A DNA stretch of 64,000 bases, taken from the IMG/VR virus record IMGVR_UViG_3300042302_000394, positions 124,001 to 188,000 of that record; one strand, given 5' to 3'. Below are positions 24,669 through 33,971 of the stretch, one piece after another. Both the position numbers and the translations under genes were made by a program. The notes below the pieces were generated by a model. It was not told the DNA's origin and ran no database searches. It worked only from the letters and a program-made list of their open reading frames with translations. Within the stretch, counting starts at the first letter, position 1; each line of letters begins with the position of its first letter.

Positions 24669-24938
24669 ATGACAGACTTTAATACACCAAAGCTACCAGA
24701 AGTTAAATTTAATAAGAACGGCTACGAAATCCGTACAGACATTCTAGGCATGGCAAAAAGCCTAGTACAAGAAGATTTCCATGCTAAATTTCAAGGCTGG
24801 GAAATGACTGCTACTCGTGACGAGAAGACTGGTCAGATCGTCAGTACTGTTGCAATGCCGACTTTTCCAGGACTAGACAAAGTTCTTGAAACAGCAGAAA
24901 AAATGTACGCATTTGTCAACGCTGGCGCCAAGAAATAA
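24669..24938 (+). CDS. conserved phage hypothetical protein X (89 aa)
   Basis: ATG 24669 with CAGGA SD; NKNGYEIRTDIL motif; second copy at 29038. Confidence 0.8.
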   Translation: MTDFNTPKLPEVKFNKNGYEIRTDILGMAKSLVQEDFHAKFQGWEMTATRDEKTGQIVSTVAMPTFPGLDKVLETAEKMYAFVNAGAKK

Positions 24939-25013
24939 TTTATAATAATATTAGGGCATAGCCCATAAAATAATATACTAGAAAATAAAAAAGGACCTTC
25001 GGGTCCTTTTTTT
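24678..25013 (+). repeat. direct repeat copy 1 (gene X + 3' UTR + terminator)
   Basis: Homologous to 29038-29374; 44-bp perfect core 24798-24841 = 29158-29201. Confidence 0.85.
24987..25013. terminator. bidirectional intrinsic terminator
   Basis: AAAAAAGGACC-TTCG-GGTCCTTTTTT between convergent genes. Confidence 0.85.
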
Positions 25014-25416
25014 ATAGTGGCTTGCTTCTTAGATAGTTAGGATATCGTTTATTGAAGTTACGCATAATAACTCCTGCTATCTCATGTGCTTGATTTTCAT
25101 GCGGACTACCTGTTTCACCACTAGTATCCGTTAGCTCACCTTGCTGATCTTGTTTGTAATGAACCAGCTCGTGTGCCACTGTTCTCAGTATGTCAACAGG
25201 GTGACGGTTCTTTAAGGCAACTAACAGCATATTCTCACTCGGCACGTATGCACCAAAGCTGGGCTGCTCGCCTGTATTTAGATCCGGGGCAAACTGCATC
25301 TTAGGCAACTGATCTATTTCAAGGATCTCCATAGCTAGAGGTAGAAACTTTTGAAACATTTCCACAACGTTGGCATTTTCCTCTGCGCCTTCAACAATAA
25401 ACTGACGTGCTCTCAT
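25012..25416 (-). CDS. HExxH zinc-metallopeptidase-like protein with CTS-like N-terminus
   Basis: DILRTVAHELVHYKQ ... PHENQAH; starts MRARQFIVE. Confidence 0.65.
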   Translation of the reverse strand: MRARQFIVEGAEENANVVEMFQKFLPLAMEILEIDQLPKMQFAPDLNTGEQPSFGAYVPSENMLLVALKNRHPVDILRTVAHELVHYKQDQQGELTDTSGETGSPHENQAHEIAGVIMRNFNKRYPNYLRSKPL

Positions 25417-25424
25417 AGCAGTAT

Positions 25425-28400
25425 TTAGCGCCGAACAAAATGATAATCACCGTCGGGTCCGTTGTTGCTAAAGATACCCAAACAGTCGAACCCTTGTGTG
25501 TCCATATATGCTATTACATCATCTTTTAACGGGGCACCTTTATTGTATTCTACAACCTGTAGTTCTAGAATAACATGTTTCACTGTGGATAATGTTTCTA
25601 CAGCACCCTTTAGCACATCTAACTCTGCACCTTGTACATCCATTTTAATCATATCTGGGGGAGGAAAGTTTTTAAGGCGGCGTACAGCATCTAGGGTCAC
25701 TGTCTTTAGCCTACGACGATGTGTTTCGTTAAAGTAGTTGACTGTTTCGGGATTTACTTCTTCGTTTTCTTTGTAATAACTGTTGCCACCCGGATGTACA
25801 TCATTTTGATAGAAGTCAACTTCTTTGCCACTCTGGTCACTTAGCACACCCATATGATATTGCAAATTACGTTCTTTATATAGGAACTCGCTACTGTCCA
25901 TTGCTTCAAATACAACATACTTTGCTCGATCCCAAATACGTTGTGCTTCGTTAGTCCAGTGCAGAACACATGCACCGATATCGTATATAACCTTTGGTTC
26001 AAACCCTTCATTCTTGAGTTTGGCAAGATAATCTACATGGTTACGAGGAATCAGTCGTTGACTTCCTAACTCCCGTAAACGATCCTGTATGTTAAACGGT
26101 GTTACATCTGGGGCAGCAGTAATGGCATTATCTACATTAAAAGTAAAGCTGCCAGTATGGCTGCATAACACACTGGGATCTGCCCAAATTTTAAATCCTT
26201 TGTCCCGGGCCTTGCGACAGAAATCTACATCTTCTGAAACAGTGTTCCTATGATCGATAGCACTATAATACTTAAATTGTGGATAACCTATTTCACACAT
26301 AACTTCTGCTTTGACTAGAGCACAACCAAATCCACAGCCGGCAATTTCAACTAAAGGTCTACCCTTTAGCTTTTCATACGGCATATTGCTTACTCCGCCA
26401 TTCTGATTGTGTTCATATATTTCTAAAATATGTAATCCAGGTTTACGTTGTATGTATAAACCGCTGACAACATCCTTATCGTGCGATAGCAACTTTGACA
26501 GTGTGTTAGGAGGGAAGCTAATATCACTATCTACACTGAATAGATAATCAAATCCTTTTACTACCCAGTCGGCAATCAAGTTGCGTACCTGATCAATATT
26601 GTATCCGTAAAAATATTGGAACGTTGCTTCGTAGCCCTCGGGGATGATTAAGTCATAGATACTTTTAAAAGTTTCCGGTTCAATATTACGAGCTGTTGGA
26701 ATTGCTATGAGAATCTTTTTTTTAGATGGATTCATTTTTTTAATAATAGATTTAGCTGCTACGTTTTGTTCAATAGCATTTACTTTGTAATCGTTGAGTG
26801 GATTAACATCATTGTAATTATATACAATATCTTGTAGACATTTAACTTTACTAGGATCAGCATTTTCGATTAGTGCATAGAAAATACTGCCGTCACCGCC
26901 TGCCTTATACCATGCACCTGTGTCATCTTGGAATAGGCTATCGTCTAGACCGTCAATTAACTGTTGTTTAAATGTGCGTAGGTGTGTGTAAGGTAAGATC
27001 CAATTAAAGTGATGATTCCTGTATTCTTTGCTGTTCTTTACGTGCTCGGGATAAGGCTGACTAATCAATGGAATATTATCAACCATTGACCAGCAACTAC
27101 CGTAGGTAAATTCTGTTGTGCCGTCATACACATTGTTATAGTAGCTGAACACAGTGTTGTCATTAACTAGACTGTCGTCACCGTCGAGTATCATTACAAT
27201 AGCATTGGGATCTTGTAGACTTCTAAATGTATCTATTTGATTTTTTACTGCGCCTACGTTATTTTGATTTTCAATAACTTCAAACTTGGCTCGAATGTGT
27301 GCAGGATAGGCTGACAGTGCAGTGTACAATGCTTCCAGTGTATTATCAGTACTTGCATCGTCTACCAAAATACATCGATAGTTGTCGTAGTCTTGTGTAG
27401 CAATACTGTTGATGCAACGTGCAATATAATTTTTGCAATTGTAGAATGTGCTAACAACCACAATAGGTTGCTCTGTTCCCGGCTTGTAATCTTCTAATTC
27501 AACTGTATTATGAAACTTGCGATTGTAAATCTTGTGCAGTCTGTGGTTGATTTTGCTAACAGCACGATAGTCACTGCTGCTTAGATAATGTCCTGTCTTT
27601 TTATAAAAATGCTGCTTCCATTGCAGTGCTACACTGTCCCAACCCGCAATGTCTTTAACAATGTTGCAATAGTATTGTTTCTGTTGATGTAGATACGGAT
27701 TACGATATGCTTCTACCGTGGTCTTGACAAACTGTTCAACCTGTGTTGGTACACTGATATCCGGAAACAGTCCATTGGGTTCAATAGCATAGTCAATTAA
27801 GTAACAAGCACCTGCCACTGCAATTTCTTCTAATGCACCAAAGCGGCAAGTTATGATAGGAGTGTTGTAGCATAAACTCTCCATTGATGAAATGCCGTAG
27901 GTTTCCGGAAACGCTGCCGGATACAGCATGAAGTTAGCAGTAGTTAGTATATCGGCAATTTCTTTCTGCGGTATAACACCTGTAAATTCTATACCTTGTG
28001 CTGCTAGCTGCGGATCAGCAGCCATCTCGCGCCAATCTTTTTCTTGTTGATCAGGTTCTGCATTTGTGCTAAATCTATAGTAGCCGCCTATGACTTTTAG
28101 TTTAGCTTCAGGTATATGTCGCTTGACATGTGGCCAGATCATTTTAACCAGCGGAATCATTCCTTTGGTCACTGATGCATTATAAACAAACAAATTCTTA
28201 TCTTTGGCTTTGATATCCACTTCGCGATTATAGATGCGTACACCGTTACGTGTGATGAACATCTTACGCTTTAGTACTTCGAAGTTTCGTCTGCGGCCAT
28301 GATGACAGTTAGTAACATAGGTTAGGTGGAAATCGCTTAGTGTAAAGATGTCTGTAATTCTATCTGCAACAGCAAGCTCTTCGATCAAGTTATCGCCTAG

Positions 28401-28793
28401 ACAGAATGTGTCGTGCATCCACAATACTCGCATTTTAGCTTTACTGATAATCCTGTCGTATAGATTCATAGACATGAATGGTACACTGCGATTATCGTTT
28501 AATCTCGGATAATCTTTCGGATCAGTGAATGGAATAATTGTGCGACTGCTTATAACAATATCAAACTCGTGATTGTTAGCTAGATCTGTAAGTGGCCTAT
28601 AAGTTACTGTGTCGTACTTGCCAGGTACTGCATGATCAATGTTACAGTTATTGAACACTGTAACATCAAATCCAATTTGTGCGAGTTCCCTACTCATTAG
28701 GATAACAGCACTTTCGCTGCCTCCTAGTCCTTGTTTGAATACCGTAGTTCCGTCGTATGGGATGCCGATAATATCTATAATAGCTAGCTTCAT
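25425..28793 (-). CDS. multidomain glycosyltransferase (GT4 + GT2 + GT2-like) fused to FkbM-type methyltransferase
   Basis: GLGGSE and FPETYGISSMES (GT4); ILVDDAS, ILDGDD (GT2); LIAIPT, FSVDSD, SEDVDFC; YDIGAC, IKMDVQGAE (FkbM). Confidence 0.85.
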   Translation of the reverse strand: MKLAIIDIIGIPYDGTTVFKQGLGGSESAVILMSRELAQIGFDVTVFNNCNIDHAVPGKYDTVTYRPLTDLANNHEFDIVISSRTIIPFTDPKDYPRLNDNRSVPFMSMNLYDRIISKAKMRVLWMHDTFCLGDNLIEELAVADRITDIFTLSDFHLTYVTNCHHGRRRNFEVLKRKMFITRNGVRIYNREVDIKAKDKNLFVYNASVTKGMIPLVKMIWPHVKRHIPEAKLKVIGGYYRFSTNAEPDQQEKDWREMAADPQLAAQGIEFTGVIPQKEIADILTTANFMLYPAAFPETYGISSMESLCYNTPIITCRFGALEEIAVAGACYLIDYAIEPNGLFPDISVPTQVEQFVKTTVEAYRNPYLHQQKQYYCNIVKDIAGWDSVALQWKQHFYKKTGHYLSSSDYRAVSKINHRLHKIYNRKFHNTVELEDYKPGTEQPIVVVSTFYNCKNYIARCINSIATQDYDNYRCILVDDASTDNTLEALYTALSAYPAHIRAKFEVIENQNNVGAVKNQIDTFRSLQDPNAIVMILDGDDSLVNDNTVFSYYNNVYDGTTEFTYGSCWSMVDNIPLISQPYPEHVKNSKEYRNHHFNWILPYTHLRTFKQQLIDGLDDSLFQDDTGAWYKAGGDGSIFYALIENADPSKVKCLQDIVYNYNDVNPLNDYKVNAIEQNVAAKSIIKKMNPSKKKILIAIPTARNIEPETFKSIYDLIIPEGYEATFQYFYGYNIDQVRNLIADWVVKGFDYLFSVDSDISFPPNTLSKLLSHDKDVVSGLYIQRKPGLHILEIYEHNQNGGVSNMPYEKLKGRPLVEIAGCGFGCALVKAEVMCEIGYPQFKYYSAIDHRNTVSEDVDFCRKARDKGFKIWADPSVLCSHTGSFTFNVDNAITAAPDVTPFNIQDRLRELGSQRLIPRNHVDYLAKLKNEGFEPKVIYDIGACVLHWTNEAQRIWDRAKYVVFEAMDSSEFLYKERNLQYHMGVLSDQSGKEVDFYQNDVHPGGNSYYKENEEVNPETVNYFNETHRRRLKTVTLDAVRRLKNFPPPDMIKMDVQGAELDVLKGAVETLSTVKHVILELQVVEYNKGAPLKDDVIAYMDTQGFDCLGIFSNNGPDGDYHFVRR

Positions 28794-28800
28794 GCTATTA

Positions 28801-28828
28801 ATTATACAGTATATCTTAGTAGGGTCAA
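28801..28828 (-). promoter_or_regulatory. sigma70-type promoter TTGACC-16-TATAAT
   Basis: -10 ends 7 nt before the GT start codon. Confidence 0.6.
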
Positions 28829-28878
28829 TGATATTGATTTTTACTCATTGATCGGATAATGCTCGTGAAATTAATCTT

Positions 28879-29041
28879 TTAATAATCTAGGTAAGACTCT
28901 GTCAGTGCTGTAAAGTTAAGAAGTTTGGAAAGGACCTGCAGGTGCCGTGAAGTTAGCAGTGTAACGTGCTACACCATTGGTAATTCTGAAGTCACTAATG
29001 TATCCGTTCAAATAATCACCAGCCTGGCCTCCAAAGTTTTG
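28879..29041 (-). pseudogene. orphan alternative C-termini of the LamG fibre gene
   Basis: 28916-29008 encodes [30 protein letters not shown], matching the end of the 1526-aa protein; 28879-28917 encodes NFTALTESYLDY*. Confidence 0.75.
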
Positions 29042-29298
29042 AAACCCCAAAATTGCCAGAAGTTAAATTCAACAAAAACGGATACGAAATCCGTACAGAT
29101 ATCCTAGATATGGCAAAGGGACTAGTAAGCGAAGAATTTCATTCCAAATTTCAAGGTTGGGAAATGACTGCTACTCGTGACGAGAAGACTGGTCAGATCG
29201 TTACCAAAGTTGGTATGCCAGAGTTTCCAGGACTTGAAAAAGTTCTTGAGACAGCGGAAAAAATGTATAGTTTTGTCAATGCTGGTGCTAAGAAATAA
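29038..29298 (+). pseudogene. 5'-truncated second copy of gene X
   Basis: 69/80 aa identical to 24669-24938; lacks ATG/SD (only TTG at 29053); fused to the LamG remnant. Confidence 0.7.
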
Positions 29299-29350
29299 TT
29301 TTATAATAATAATATTAGGGCATAGCCCAAACATAATATAGTAAGTAATG

Positions 29351-29374
29351 AAAAAGGACCCGAAGGTCCTTTTT
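29351..29374. terminator. bidirectional intrinsic terminator
   Basis: AAAAAGGACC-CGAA-GGTCCTTTT. Confidence 0.85.
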
Positions 29375-29390
29375 CTATAGTATTTCGCTG

Positions 29391-32300
29391 TTACTGAGTC
29401 AGGGAAACACCTGTAGGTGGTGTAAAGTTAGCAGTGTAACGGGCAATACCTAGGGTGATTCTAAAGTCACTAATATAACCATTGACACTATGAGCAGCAC
29501 TAAAGCTACTGCCACCTATATATATAAGACCGGTAGCAGATGCAAAATTAGTTGAATTAGAAGTAGTGGAGCCAACTTGTGTTCCGTTAACAAATAATCT
29601 CAGTGATGTGCCTGATCTGGTAGCTGCTATATGAGTCCAAGTATTTGCTACTACTGCTGTGGTCGTCACATTTAATATAACCGCGTTTCTTGCGTCAAGC
29701 TTCAGTTGGGTGGTGCTCCAATCGTAACCAAATGACACTACCGATCCTCCATCGTCAGGTCGTAAAAACGAAGAAAATGTACTAGTGTTTGCCATGTTTA
29801 CCCAAAGTTCTATAGTAAAGTCGCCTGTACCAAAATTTATAGAGGCACCGCCTATATAAGTCAAACTATCCCCATTACCGTCAAACTTCACGCTTTCTGT
29901 GCCGGTGAATTTAACTACTGTGGTGTCAATTTTAGCATCACCCACAGTTTCATAATTGTTCATTCCCGAACTGTCATAGACACCAGCACCGGTTCCGTTG
30001 ATCAATAATACAGTGTTTCTAACTGCTGTTAATGGTGTGTTTTGTGGTACGAAATTTGAGGTGTAGAGTGCGGTACCTTTGACATATCTAAAATCGCTGA
30101 TGTAACCAGTAACACCTACTGGGTTAAAAGCAGTCCAATTGGTTGAATTAACGCCTAACCATAATCCGTTAGGTCCAGCTAAATCATATCGACTACTCAA
30201 TGGTTGTGCTGCACCAGGTGCGCTGACCGCTGTTCCTCCTACTCCATTTACATACACTTTAATAAAATTACTCGAACGAACTAGCGCAATGTGGTTCCAG
30301 CTATTAGTTGATAAAGTAGCCGACGACGGAAATAGCGCGGTATATTGTACAGAGCTCGTATTACTGCCGCCGCTGATAAAGATACTTGCGCTTTTGTTAG
30401 TAATCCAAATAACCCGCTCACTGTTATATGCTTCTTTGTAAGTGCCGTAGTTTGCTATTGTGTAATCTGCCAAACCGCTAGTTGAGTAAACCCATAACTC
30501 CATAGTGAAGTCTTGACCGGAAGCAAAATTCATTACGGATGTGGTATTGGTCTGAGCAGAACCAATCCAATCATTGGTACCATCAAAGCGTGAACTACCG
30601 CCAAACACTTGTGGTGTATAACGTTGTCTAGTAGTGTAAGCGACGTTGAATGGTGCGAATTGGGATGGTATCGTGTTACCAACCGCAGTTATTGCAAAAT
30701 TGTTTGTACTGTTATCTATGAAAGTATTAGATTGGCAAGTCAATAAACTTGTACCTGCGATAGCAGTTAGTGGTTCAGTAGGTACTGTTATCGTAGTAGA
30801 TGTAGCAGCGTAGGGAGCAGAACCAGTAGCACCATTATAAATCCTAACGTTACTAATATACCCCACATGGCCTCCGCCCCCAGCAATGATGCCAAAACCA
30901 ATATATAAAGCACTGGCACTGGTTTTTGCAGCAGTGTTCAATCCGTTGAAAGATGTTGCCCTAGTGCCATTGATGAACAAAGCCCAGTCTGCATTTGTTT
31001 TGACCAATGCCAAGTGATACCACTGACCTGCAACAGGAACGGTACTAGAAGGAAGAACGCCGATCCCCGAGCTGCCAGGTGCACCAGAAGCTCCCCAATT
31101 TATAGCAATTTGACTAGATGCATTTAAATATATTGCCCAGTTTGAAAAAGAGACAGTATCTAATCCGCCGTTGTCAATGATAGTTCGGTTGGCACTAACA
31201 GTAGCAAAGTTTACCCAAAGCTCGCAACTAAAAGAATCTGTGCTACCCGAAGTGATATTAAATGCAGCATTTGATGGTACAGTTAAATAATCCCCAGTAC
31301 CATCAAAGTAGTTGCTATAATAAGGTGTAGGTAATGAGGTTTCTGTAAAAGGACTGAACTTTTGCACACTGACATCACCCGCCTTGGTGACGGCAAAGTT
31401 GTTGGGGCTGGCATCGACGAGTCGATTGCGAGCACAGGTCAACAAACTTGTTCCAGCTATGGGTTGCAGTGGGGCGGTGCTTGGTGTAAAGTTAGCGGTA
31501 TAAAGTGCGGTGCCTTTGACTAACCTTAAATTACTAATATAACCGGTAACATATTCAGATGTTCCGTCTGAATATGCTCCAACAGTCACTTGGCTTGCAC
31601 CGTCGGTTAGTGCTCCTATTGTGCCGGTAGTTGCATCTAATACTCCGTTCACAAACAATCTAACAGTACTGCTGGATCGTGTAATTGCAACGTGATTCCA
31701 TTGGTTGATGACTACCGCAGTGGTAGTTCCTGTTACATTGGTAGCAGCCCCTGAAAATTGTAGTCGACCAGCAGCAACATATCTAAAGATCCATGCATTA
31801 CCGGTACCCCATTGTGCCAATATATTATTATTTCCTGAAGTAATAGAAGTTGGATACACCCAGCATTCAAAAGTAAAGTCATTAGTGCCCAATGTGAACG
31901 CAGCGTTGTCCGGAATACTTAAATAATCGCCAGTACCATCAAAGTAGTTGCTCCATCCACCACCGTAGGGACTGAATGTTCCTTGTGTAGTATTACCATT
32001 TCTTGTTATCAAGAAATTGTTAGTGCTGTTGTCAATGAACACATTGTTGTTGACTGGTTGATTGGTTTGGCAAGTCAATAAACTTGTACCTGCGATAGCA
32101 GTTAGTGGTTCAGTAGGTACAGTTAATGTAGTTTGTGTCGGATCGTAAACTGCTGTACCTATAACAACTCTAAAATTACTAATATAACCAAAAAACATCT
32201 GTGAAGCTGCACCGCCTATAGTTGCTGGTCCTGCTACATAATTTGTGCTGACTGTACCATTGACATTACGAACACCGTTAAAAAATATACTTGTTTGGTT

Positions 32301-33971
32301 TGCACCTGTTCCACTTCTTACAGCCACAATATGTAACCATCTATTTGTAACAAACGGACTTCCCGATGTTGCTATAGTATTGCCTACGCCGTATGTACCA
32401 ATATTTAAATTTCCACCGCTATCTGTTTGTAATTGTATACCTCCGTTTGTAGTGGTACCAAATATAATAGCGTTTGTTGGTATTGATGTAGGATAAGCCC
32501 AAAACTCTATAGTAAAGGCACTAGTTCCGAGCGTCATTGATTGTGCCGTTAAAAAGTCCCCAGTACCATCAAAGTAAGTACTGCCGTATCCACTATAACT
32601 AGTATTGGGTACAAACGGATCAAACCCTGATATAGCCAAATTTCCATTTACTGTTAGTGCAAAATTGTTTGTACTGTTATCAATAAATCTATTGCTCTGA
32701 CAAGTTAATAAAGTAGTACCTGCAATAGCAGTTAGTGGTACCGTAGGCGGTGTAAAGTTAGCTGTATAAACAGCAGAACCTTTGACTATTCTTACATTAG
32801 AAATATATCCGTTGAAGTCCCATCCACTGCCTGCATCTGGATTTCTACCAATGTAAAATGTACTTGCATTATCGGAGCCCGGGACAAGTGCGCCAGTAGC
32901 TGTTTGCGCTACACCGTTTAAGTACAGTATATTTGTTGTTCCGTCGTAACACATGGCAACATGATTCCACTGGTTCAAAGGAGCAGTATTGTTTGATAGT
33001 TGACTACTGCCAGTATTAAATAACCAAGTCACTTGTTGAGATGTGTTTACATCAAGTCGCCATCTTGCGGCGCCTGATGAAATTAATTGAACTTGTTTTG
33101 AGCTTGTTTGATAAAACCAACATTCAACAGTCCACGACCCGGAGCTTAGGTTAAATGCTACATTTCCCGGATTAGATATAAAATCACCAGTACCATCAAA
33201 GAAATTACTGTAATATCCAGGTGTATATGGACCGAAGTTATTTGGTCTAGTATCGCCAAATATAGATACTGGGAAGTTGTTTGTACTTGCATCGTCGACA
33301 AATACACTAGTTGCAGGGGAATTTGCACTAATCAATGTAGTGACATTTTTAAAGAAAGGGTCAGCGATCGTTATAGTAACAGTAAAGGCTCTGGGGCTTT
33401 CTTGTAATTCCACATCAATTGCTTCTATAGTAAAATTATAAAGTGTTTCAACACCCACTGCAACTAATCCAGTAATTAATCCACTGCTGGACAATGAAAC
33501 ACCGCTCGGTAAACTACTACCGGCTTGAACCGCATATGTTAGTGGTGAATCTCCGGTTGTTTCTAGTTGTATAGAGATGGCAGTATTTGCCGGTTGATCG
33601 GGCAATGTACTACCTGTTACCCAAGTAGGGTTTCCACTATAGGTTAACCCATTAACTCGTATTGCGACTCCACCATCGGGATTGACTACATACACTACAT
33701 ATGTACCCGCAACCTGTGCAGGAACCTGTACATTTAGGGTAGTACTATTTACAAATGTAACTGATGTTGCGTTTGCACTGCCTAAAATAACTTGACATCC
33801 TGAAACAAACTTAGTTCCTGTGAGTTTTATGTAACCACCGGATAGTAATACAGCGGTATCATCAATAATAGCATAACTGGCATCTGTTATTTGTACGTTG
33901 GTTAACGTAGGGCCGCCCAACGCGGCTAATGTTGCAGGTTGTATGTTGTCTTGACTAATTTGAGTAGGCAT
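29391..33971 (-). CDS. large fibre/adhesin with IPT/TIG, Ig-like and repeated LamG (ConA-like) domains
   Basis: Repeated YFDGTGDYL...FT.E.W...W.H.A...GYISN.R..KG.A.YT.NFT units. Confidence 0.85.
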   Translation of the reverse strand: MPTQISQDNIQPATLAALGGPTLTNVQITDASYAIIDDTAVLLSGGYIKLTGTKFVSGCQVILGSANATSVTFVNSTTLNVQVPAQVAGTYVVYVVNPDGGVAIRVNGLTYSGNPTWVTGSTLPDQPANTAISIQLETTGDSPLTYAVQAGSSLPSGVSLSSSGLITGLVAVGVETLYNFTIEAIDVELQESPRAFTVTITIADPFFKNVTTLISANSPATSVFVDDASTNNFPVSIFGDTRPNNFGPYTPGYYSNFFDGTGDFISNPGNVAFNLSSGSWTVECWFYQTSSKQVQLISSGAARWRLDVNTSQQVTWLFNTGSSQLSNNTAPLNQWNHVAMCYDGTTNILYLNGVAQTATGALVPGSDNASTFYIGRNPDAGSGWDFNGYISNVRIVKGSAVYTANFTPPTVPLTAIAGTTLLTCQSNRFIDNSTNNFALTVNGNLAISGFDPFVPNTSYSGYGSTYFDGTGDFLTAQSMTLGTSAFTIEFWAYPTSIPTNAIIFGTTTNGGIQLQTDSGGNLNIGTYGVGNTIATSGSPFVTNRWLHIVAVRSGTGANQTSIFFNGVRNVNGTVSTNYVAGPATIGGAASQMFFGYISNFRVVIGTAVYDPTQTTLTVPTEPLTAIAGTSLLTCQTNQPVNNNVFIDNSTNNFLITRNGNTTQGTFSPYGGGWSNYFDGTGDYLSIPDNAAFTLGTNDFTFECWVYPTSITSGNNNILAQWGTGNAWIFRYVAAGRLQFSGAATNVTGTTTAVVINQWNHVAITRSSSTVRLFVNGVLDATTGTIGALTDGASQVTVGAYSDGTSEYVTGYISNLRLVKGTALYTANFTPSTAPLQPIAGTSLLTCARNRLVDASPNNFAVTKAGDVSVQKFSPFTETSLPTPYYSNYFDGTGDYLTVPSNAAFNITSGSTDSFSCELWVNFATVSANRTIIDNGGLDTVSFSNWAIYLNASSQIAINWGASGAPGSSGIGVLPSSTVPVAGQWYHLALVKTNADWALFINGTRATSFNGLNTAAKTSASALYIGFGIIAGGGGHVGYISNVRIYNGATGSAPYAATSTTITVPTEPLTAIAGTSLLTCQSNTFIDNSTNNFAITAVGNTIPSQFAPFNVAYTTRQRYTPQVFGGSSRFDGTNDWIGSAQTNTTSVMNFASGQDFTMELWVYSTSGLADYTIANYGTYKEAYNSERVIWITNKSASIFISGGSNTSSVQYTALFPSSATLSTNSWNHIALVRSSNFIKVYVNGVGGTAVSAPGAAQPLSSRYDLAGPNGLWLGVNSTNWTAFNPVGVTGYISDFRYVKGTALYTSNFVPQNTPLTAVRNTVLLINGTGAGVYDSSGMNNYETVGDAKIDTTVVKFTGTESVKFDGNGDSLTYIGGASINFGTGDFTIELWVNMANTSTFSSFLRPDDGGSVVSFGYDWSTTQLKLDARNAVILNVTTTAVVANTWTHIAATRSGTSLRLFVNGTQVGSTTSNSTNFASATGLIYIGGSSFSAAHSVNGYISDFRITLGIARYTANFTPPTGVSLTQ

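What the first reader, a model, noticed from the sequence alone, without database searches (positions are those of the whole stretch)
28879..29065. Stacked orphan C-termini of the LamG fibre gene
Seen: 28916-29008 encodes [30 protein letters not shown], versus [30 protein letters not shown] in the active gene, with many synonymous differences. Overlapping its stop, 28879-28917 encodes a third ending, NFTALTESYLDY*, matching the active gene at 17 of 20 nt (TAACTTTACAgCACtgACAG). There is no start codon or RBS, and the frame is closed by a stop at 29063-29065. Inference: successive allele replacements of the receptor-binding gene left old 3' ends behind, or these are silent cassettes for C-terminal switching.
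Basis: partly seen in the sequence, partly recalled or inferred. Interest (0 to 1): 0.62.

Follow-up and report, generated by a model that had tools for sequence, protein, structure and literature searches.

The report
Leftover fibre-gene ends from phage recombination
Two promoterless tail ends of a LamG-type fibre gene, plus a beheaded copy of a small conserved gene, sit behind the working gene of a lake phage; they are most likely scars from the fibre gene being swapped by recombination with other phages, an ordinary process caught in unusual detail.

Summary
On the minus strand, the 1526-aa six-LamG gene (33971-29391) is followed by four elements:
- a two-way terminator;
- a plus-strand copy of a conserved small gene that has lost its Shine-Dalgarno site, ATG and first about 4 codons (homology 29034/38-29381);
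- a 39-codon LamG 3' remnant (29035-28916);
- a 12-codon remnant (28917-28879).

The conserved promoter of a glycosyltransferase gene comes next.

In related IMG/VR contigs the gene before that promoter is hypervariable. It is LamG-ending in at least nine loci, and its stop abuts the promoter. The small gene lies only downstream of the glycosyltransferase, where the window keeps an intact second copy (24669-24938).

The beheaded copy is closer to the copy in another phage lineage (L087: 6 synonymous and 3 non-synonymous codon differences) than to the resident copy (21 and 12). So a foreign block was recombined in illegitimately, stranding the older 3' ends.

The junctions are identical in six IMG/VR contigs and in Logan contigs of four lake metagenome runs, so this is not a chimera.

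Mismatches are mostly synonymous and not adenine-specific. No reverse transcriptase, invertase or flanking inverted repeats were found, and no alternative in-register joints. This is a recombination scar, not a switching system. Interest is low to moderate.

The parts
29391..33971 (-). Active 1526-aa virion or fibre-type gene with six LamG (Laminin_G_3) domains. It ends ...[17 protein letters not shown].
   Evidence: Pfam PF13385 E 1.8e-105 in 6 stretches. PHROG hits to baseplate wedge and virion structural proteins.
29350..29375 (.). Two-way intrinsic terminator hairpin shared by the LamG gene and small-gene copy A. It is part of the imported module.
   Evidence: It is homologous to the terminator behind copy B (24988-25011) with the loop flipped (D10, I1).
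29034..29298 (+). Copy A of a conserved small gene, truncated at its 5' end. The Shine-Dalgarno site, ATG and about 4 codons are missing. The frame is open from [11 protein letters not shown] to the stop, and only a TTG at 29053 could start it. Module homology to relatives runs 29034/38-29375/81.
28916..29035 (-). LamG 3' remnant 2: 39 codons plus stop ([39 protein letters not shown]). It has no start and no promoter.
   Evidence: D6. In codons -30 to -10 there are 8 synonymous and 2 non-synonymous codon differences.
28879..28917 (-). LamG 3' remnant 3: 12 codons plus stop (NFTALTESYLDY*). It is in another frame and shares 2 nt (28916-28917) with the TAA stop (28916-28918) of remnant 2.
   Evidence: 27/42 to the active end with stops aligned, unique in the genome.
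28841..28878 (-). Spacer of about 40 nt of unknown origin between remnant 3 and the conserved promoter block. Relatives have nothing here.
   Evidence: A TAATTTCACG (NFT-like) match is not significant: 423 of 3000 shuffles reach it.
28794..28840 (-). Conserved promoter block AATCAATATCATTGACC-N16-TATAATTAATAGC directly before the glycosyltransferase ATG. It marks the right-hand border of the variable fibre slot in relatives.
   Evidence: 11 of 12 consensus positions; nucleotide-level conservation across loci with unrelated upstream genes.
25425..28793 (-). 1122-aa multidomain glycosyltransferase and FkbM methyltransferase gene.
   Evidence: 136 related stretches found in IMG/VR.
25012..25416 (-). 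134-aa gene of unknown function that travels with the glycosyltransferase in some relatives.
24669..24938 (+). Intact copy B of the small conserved gene (89 aa, starting [14 protein letters not shown]), in the position syntenic with relatives.
   Evidence: the Atlas holds this exact protein.

Best explanation
The region 28879-29381 is a non-functional composite recombination scar at the 3' border of a hypervariable fibre-gene slot in a freshwater phage. The record is 207.8 kb and CheckV rates it about 58% complete.

Inferred history:
1. The resident arrangement was LamG gene, then conserved promoter, then glycosyltransferase, then p134, then terminator, facing the small gene.
2. An earlier replacement of the LamG allele ended imprecisely. 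It left the last 12 codons of the previous allele (remnant 3) behind the new stop, with the joint at a shared TAA.
3. Later a block from another phage lineage came in. In that lineage a LamG gene lay directly convergent with the small gene. The block comprised the LamG 3' part or the whole gene, the terminator and the small gene.
4. Its right-hand joint was illegitimate. It fell between about codon 4 of the donor's small gene and codon -39 of the resident LamG gene, at about 29033-29037.
5. This stranded remnant 2 and created a beheaded second copy of the small gene.

What is shown: the anatomy, the homologies, the different affinities of the two small-gene copies, the synteny in relatives, and the fixed junctions.

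What is inferred: the order and number of events, the donor arrangement, and that neither the remnants nor copy A are expressed.
For: - Relatives: the gene upstream of the glycosyltransferase varies completely. It is LamG-ending in L012, L023, L025, L026, L051, L055, L061, L071 and L072, and glycine-rich or other types elsewhere. In most of these loci its stop lies 34-56 nt before the glycosyltransferase ATG, where it abuts the conserved promoter.
- In loci other than the window's own lineage, the small gene is found only downstream of the glycosyltransferase.
- Relatives start the small gene with AAGGAG-N-ATG and then [14 protein letters not shown]. Copy A has ...[15 protein letters not shown] with no ATG or Shine-Dalgarno site.
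- Homology of the small-gene and terminator module to about 60 loci stops sharply at 29033-29056 (mostly 29034-29038) on one side. Where it reaches the terminator, it stops at 29372-29381 on the other.
- Over the 87 aligned codons, copy A differs from L087 by 6 synonymous and 3 non-synonymous codons (11 nt). It differs from resident copy B by 21 and 12 codons (47 nt). The window backbone is only about 68-80% identical to L087.
- Remnant 2 differs from the active end mainly at third codon positions, so it evolved as coding sequence before being orphaned.
- Junctions: six IMG/VR contigs are identical. Logan contigs of X1, X2 and X23 cover 27800-29187 with 0 differences. X4 covers 27800-29070 and 29041-29187. 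Twenty-four lake or freshwater runs hold 97-98% of the sampled words.
Against: - No donor was found. No contig has a LamG gene convergent with the small gene.
- No full gene ends in APAGPFQTS* or TESYLDY*. Searches found only the window's own lineage plus two chance matches.
- The closest relative of the active C-terminal domain is only 41% identical.
- Copy A keeps an open frame, so a function from its TTG start cannot be excluded.
- Contigs cannot reveal rare rearranged variants.
Confidence: 0.8

Rival explanations
1. The structure arose inside one genome. An unequal tandem duplication covered the segment from the LamG end to the small gene. One glycosyltransferase copy was then deleted and the copies diverged slowly. 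No foreign DNA was involved.
For: Two direct repeat pairs have matching geometry. The small gene plus terminator repeats at a spacing of about 4360 nt, and the LamG end repeats at 475 nt.
Against: Copy A is much closer to L087's small gene (11 nt differences) than to copy B (47). Yet the backbone is only about 68-80% identical to L087. In-genome copies should be each other's closest relatives unless gene conversion from outside occurred.
Confidence: 0.1
2. The remnants are silent cassettes. Homologous recombination between the direct repeats occasionally swaps or deletes DNA, giving the fibre an alternative C-terminus (...RIT|[20 protein letters not shown]). This would serve as a host-range bet-hedging device.
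For: The repeats are direct, with 80% identity over 75 nt. They lie in a receptor-binding-type gene. Stacking of two endings is reminiscent of cassette arrays.
Against: - The remnants are only 39 and 12 codons, mostly conserved LamG core.
- No in-register joint and no listed differences in the active end were seen in four runs. The single 29002-to-29572 joint is out of register, has 6 mismatches in 41 nt and sides of 26-27 nt, so it comes from another organism.
- A swap by deletion would be irreversible.
- No recombinase was found on the record.
- Relatives lack such remnants.
Confidence: 0.05
3. Remnant 2 is the template repeat of a diversity-generating retroelement that mutates the fibre's C-terminus.
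For: It is a non-coding near-copy of the 3' end of a putative receptor-binding gene lying close downstream. This is the classic layout of such elements.
Against: - The 23 mismatches in 93 nt fall on all four bases. In the remnant they are A 7, C 7, T 5, G 4, and 12 of the 23 are at third codon positions.
- No reverse transcriptase was found on the 207.8-kb record.
- The neighbour is a glycosyltransferase, and the small gene lies on the opposite strand.
Confidence: 0.01
4. The junction at about 29040 is an assembly chimera.
For: Repeats in the small gene break Logan contigs at 29172-29201.
Against: Contigs from four separate runs bridge 28879-29187 without a difference. Six IMG/VR contigs from different metagenomes carry the identical structure.
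Confidence: 0.01

Closest known systems
Vestigial tail-fibre gene fragments at novel joints in mosaic phage genomes (P2, Mu, P1, lambda and e14 fibre regions; the illegitimate-recombination model of phage mosaicism). Cited from my own knowledge of Haggard-Ljungquist 1992, Sandmeier 1994 and Hendrix 1999, not checked here.
   Same: Receptor-binding genes are exchanged between phages. The joints sometimes fall inside genes and leave promoterless 3' fragments next to the working gene.
   Different: Here two remnants are stacked. The scar also contains a beheaded duplicate of an unrelated conserved gene with its terminator. The setting is an uncultured freshwater large phage with LamG-repeat fibres.
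Promoter and stem-loop cassettes that mediate modular shuffling in T4-type phages (Arbiol et al. 2010; cited from my own knowledge, not checked here).
   Same: The variable slot is bordered by a promoter block conserved at the nucleotide level and by a conserved terminator module. In relatives the variable gene's stop abuts the promoter. This suggests that regulatory sequences serve as recombination linkers.
   Different: The two joints seen in this window lie inside coding sequence, not in the regulatory blocks. The promoter block occurs only once in this record.
Diversity-generating retroelements and invertible fibre segments (BPP-1 mtd; Mu G and P1 C).
   Same: There is a partial copy of the fibre gene's 3' end close to the active end.
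   Different: There is no reverse transcriptase, no adenine bias, no invertase and no inverted repeats, and the copies are in direct orientation.

Membership tests
Recombination scar or vestigial gene fragment | Homologous to the 3' end of an intact gene but lacking a start, a ribosome-binding site and a promoter, with the frame closed upstream | tested here: met
Recombination scar or vestigial gene fragment | Lies at a joint between segments of different ancestry | tested here: met
   Copy A differs from L087 by 11 nt and from copy B by 47 nt. The backbone is about 68-80% identical to L087. Homology ends sharply at 29033-29056, mostly 29034-29038.
Recombination scar or vestigial gene fragment | Syntenic relatives lack the fragment | tested here: met
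   In 40 or more distinct upstream regions the stop of the variable gene abuts the promoter. No remnants occur there, and no small gene lies upstream of the glycosyltransferase.
Diversity-generating retroelement (template and variable repeat pair) | Mismatches confined to adenines of the template repeat | tested here: not met
   mismatches fall on A 7, C 7, T 5, G 4, and 12 of 23 are at third codon positions.
Diversity-generating retroelement (template and variable repeat pair) | Reverse transcriptase gene nearby | tested here: not met
   no RVT_1 match on the 207.8-kb record. The record is about 58% complete, so absence from the whole genome is not proven.
Invertible fibre segment (Gin, Cin or Pin type) | Alternative C-termini in inverted orientation, flanked by inverted repeats, with a serine invertase next to them | tested here: not met
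   The remnants are on the same strand as the active gene. No flanking inverted repeats and no resolvase or invertase.
Silent-cassette gene conversion (pilE/pilS-like) | Sequence variation of the expressed copy in the population that can be traced to the cassettes | tested here: inconclusive
   Contigs of four runs show no listed differences or joints, but contigs drop rare variants and raw reads were not available.
LamG (Laminin_G_3) fibre or structural protein | Pfam PF13385 domains above the curated cut-off in the active gene, with the remnant aligning to a domain end | tested here: met
   (349.9 bits, 6 stretches); remnant 2 aligns to the ends of five of the six domains in the gene, best to the last one.

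The most novel reading that the evidence does not exclude
The direct repeats are used. Rare recombination could occur between the active end and remnant 2, or between the two small-gene copies, which would remove the glycosyltransferase cassette. The phage population would then toggle between fibre C-termini or between cassette-carrying and cassette-free forms. On that reading the scar is a working intermediate of cassette gain and loss rather than dead DNA.
Probability: 0.06. Interest if true: 0.6.

Novelty: new member of a known kind. Interest (0 to 1): 0.28.

Why it matters
This is a clean, datable example of how receptor-binding genes turn over in uncultured lake phages.
- The conserved promoter and terminator blocks define a replaceable slot.
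- The stacked leftovers record at least two successive replacements.
- The beheaded small gene shows what the donor genome looked like.

It is useful for annotation, because these fragments and copy A should not be called as genes. It is also useful for studies of fibre-module exchange. It does not reveal a new mechanism.

Tried and rejected
- Megablast of 27000-33000 and tblastn of the small protein against the 50,697 phage records found nothing.
- tblastn of the 48-aa frame found only generic LamG ends in cyanophages and other phages.
- Degenerate pattern scans for the two exact endings found only the window's own lineage plus chance hits. These hits were L165 (not in an open frame) and L167 (56% GC, not LamG). 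The scans covered IMG/VR for both endings and JGI metagenome contigs for remnant 2.
- A possible fourth remnant (TAATTTCACG, NFT-like) in the spacer is not significant. The spacer matches nothing.
- Rfam gave only sub-threshold hits on the terminator.
- Reverse transcriptase and resolvase searches were negative.
- The protein atlas gave only unnamed viral clusters for the small protein.
- Literature searches gave no paper on this lineage or on stacked fibre remnants. The comparisons with known systems therefore rest on my own knowledge.
- I did not use the large protein searches, structure prediction or complex prediction. No claim here depends on them.

Full report
**Context.** The window is bases 124001-188000 of a single 207,813-base IMG/VR virus record, which CheckV rates about 58% complete.
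- GC content is about 41% and there are no tRNAs in the window.
- Window coordinates 29-55 kb form a minus-strand cluster of collagen-like, fibre, LamG and glycine-rich structural genes.
- Structural proteins are distantly (40-48%) related to those of marine cyanomyoviruses and a few other phages.
- The DNA occurs in lake and freshwater metagenomes.

**Observation.**
- The 1526-aa gene 33971-29391 has six Laminin_G_3 domains.
- Remnant 2 matches its last domain end best: 80% over 75 nt with E 1e-13, and 73% over 109 nt. It matches the internal domain ends more weakly.
- Remnant 3 aligns without gaps to the last 42 nt of the active gene at 27/42, with the stop codons in register. Genome-wide only the active end, remnant 2 (30/42) and remnant 3 reach 26 or more. 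The chance expectation for the 125-nt gap is about 1e-4.
- All three ends, and LamG ends in relatives such as L025, L026, L051, L055 and L174, share the form FT + 9 residues + stop.

The 80 best are 84-100% identical in protein.
- Relatives begin AAGGAG-N-ATG and then [14 protein letters not shown].
- The window copy (copy A) reads ...[15 protein letters not shown]. Its ribosome-binding site, ATG and first about 4 codons are gone.
- Homology of the small gene, its 3' untranslated region and the hairpin terminator to about 60 loci ends sharply. On one side it ends at 29033-29056, mostly 29034-29038. Where it reaches the terminator, it ends at 29372-29381 on the other side, 10 nt from the LamG stop.
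- A second, intact copy (copy B, 24669-24938, 89 aa) with the same 3' untranslated region and terminator lies 4.36 kb away. It sits behind the glycosyltransferase and a 134-aa gene.

**Relatives.** The 1122-aa glycosyltransferase and methyltransferase protein matched 136 stretches in IMG/VR, of which the best 80 loci were fetched.
- Their upstream gene is hypervariable. It is LamG-ending in L012, L023, L025, L026, L051, L055, L061, L071 and L072, and glycine-rich or other types elsewhere.
- In most of these loci its stop lies 34-56 nt before the glycosyltransferase ATG. There it directly abuts a promoter block conserved at the nucleotide level, (A)ATCCAATATCWTTGAC-N17-GTGTATAATTAATAGCATG.
- Genes further upstream are barely recognisable between loci.
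- In every locus outside the window's own lineage, the small gene lies only downstream of the glycosyltransferase.
- The space between the fibre cluster and the small gene carries different accessory genes in different phages. In L087 these are a fatty-acid desaturase and a nuclease.

**Ancestry of the pieces.** Over the 87 aligned codons, copy A differs from the small gene of L087 by 6 synonymous and 3 non-synonymous codons (11 nt). The non-synonymous ones are at the extreme C-terminus. Copy A differs from copy B by 21 synonymous and 12 non-synonymous codons (47 nt).
- The window backbone is only about 68-80% identical to L087. Copy A and its terminator therefore came from another lineage, not from a recent in-genome duplication.
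- Remnant 2 differs from the active end by 8 synonymous and 2 non-synonymous codons in the conserved block. It was a working coding end before it was orphaned.

**Mechanism (inferred).** A foreign block was recombined into the slot. It comprised a LamG 3' part or whole gene, the terminator and the small gene.
- The block's right-hand joint was illegitimate. It fell between about codon 4 of the donor's small gene and codon -39 of the resident LamG gene, at about 29033-29037 with at most a few nucleotides of microhomology.
- Remnant 3 is as far from remnant 2 (27/42) as from the active end (27/42). It therefore records an earlier, separate replacement, whose joint lies in the TAA shared by the stop of remnant 2 and the GCTAAC of the older allele.
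- The remnants sit between the terminator (29350-29375) and the glycosyltransferase promoter (28828-28801). They have no start or promoter of their own.

**Not an artefact.** Six IMG/VR contigs from different metagenomes carry the identical arrangement.
- Twenty-four lake or freshwater runs hold 97-98% of the sampled words.
- Logan contigs of X1, X2 and X23 cover 27800-29187 with no difference. X4 covers 27800-29070 and 29041-29187.
- Contigs break at 29172-29201, inside a stretch that is identical in the two small-gene copies.
- The one joint involving a remnant (29002 to 29572) is out of register, has sides of 26-27 nt and comes from a contig with 6 mismatches in 41 nt. It belongs to another organism's LamG gene.
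- The other listed joint (29201 to 29306, side 24 nt) comes from short contigs at repeats shared by the two small-gene copies.

**Alternatives rejected.**
- Diversity-generating retroelement: mismatches are not adenine-specific and no reverse transcriptase was found.
- Invertible segment: the remnants are in direct orientation, with no flanking inverted repeats and no invertase.
- Structured RNA or intron: nothing in Rfam.
- Silent cassettes: no variation or in-register joints in contigs, although rare variants cannot be excluded.

**Limits.** No donor and no full gene with these exact endings was found. The closest relative of the active C-terminal domain is 41% identical. Whether copy A is expressed from its TTG is unknown.

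**Verdict.** This is a well-documented but ordinary recombination scar at a hypervariable fibre slot. It is a new member of a known kind.

Noticed in passing
window 28791-28828 (-) and 12 other sites in the genome: There are thirteen near-consensus promoters of the form TTGAC-N16-19-TATAAT followed within 0-12 nt by ATG. The glycosyltransferase example reads TATAAT-TAATAGC-ATG. This suggests leaderless or nearly leaderless mRNAs.
   Followed up: partly
window 24669-24938 (+), 29034-29298 (+): An 89-aa protein of unknown function is very strongly conserved. Among the 80 best of more than 578 IMG/VR matches it is 84-100% identical. This holds in phages whose neighbouring genes are only 50-80% identical. 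It has no Pfam, PHROG or atlas name.
   Followed up: partly
window 24988-25011 and 29351-29374: The two copies of the two-way terminator have identical stems but flipped loops (TTCG and CGAA on the plus strand). The UUCG tetraloop therefore faces the small-gene transcript at copy B and the LamG transcript at copy A.
   Followed up: no
window 24939-25424 and 28794-29390; L087:6299-7783: The gap between the end of the fibre cluster and the small gene is an accessory-gene hot spot. This phage has the glycosyltransferase/methyltransferase gene and a 134-aa gene there. L087 has a fatty-acid desaturase and an SNase-like nuclease.
   Followed up: partly
window 24678-24941 versus 29038-29301: The direct repeats are 82% identical, with one long stretch that is identical in both copies. 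Recombination between them would delete remnants 2 and 3, the glycosyltransferase and p134, and would rebuild an intact small gene. Logan contigs break inside this repeat.
   Followed up: partly
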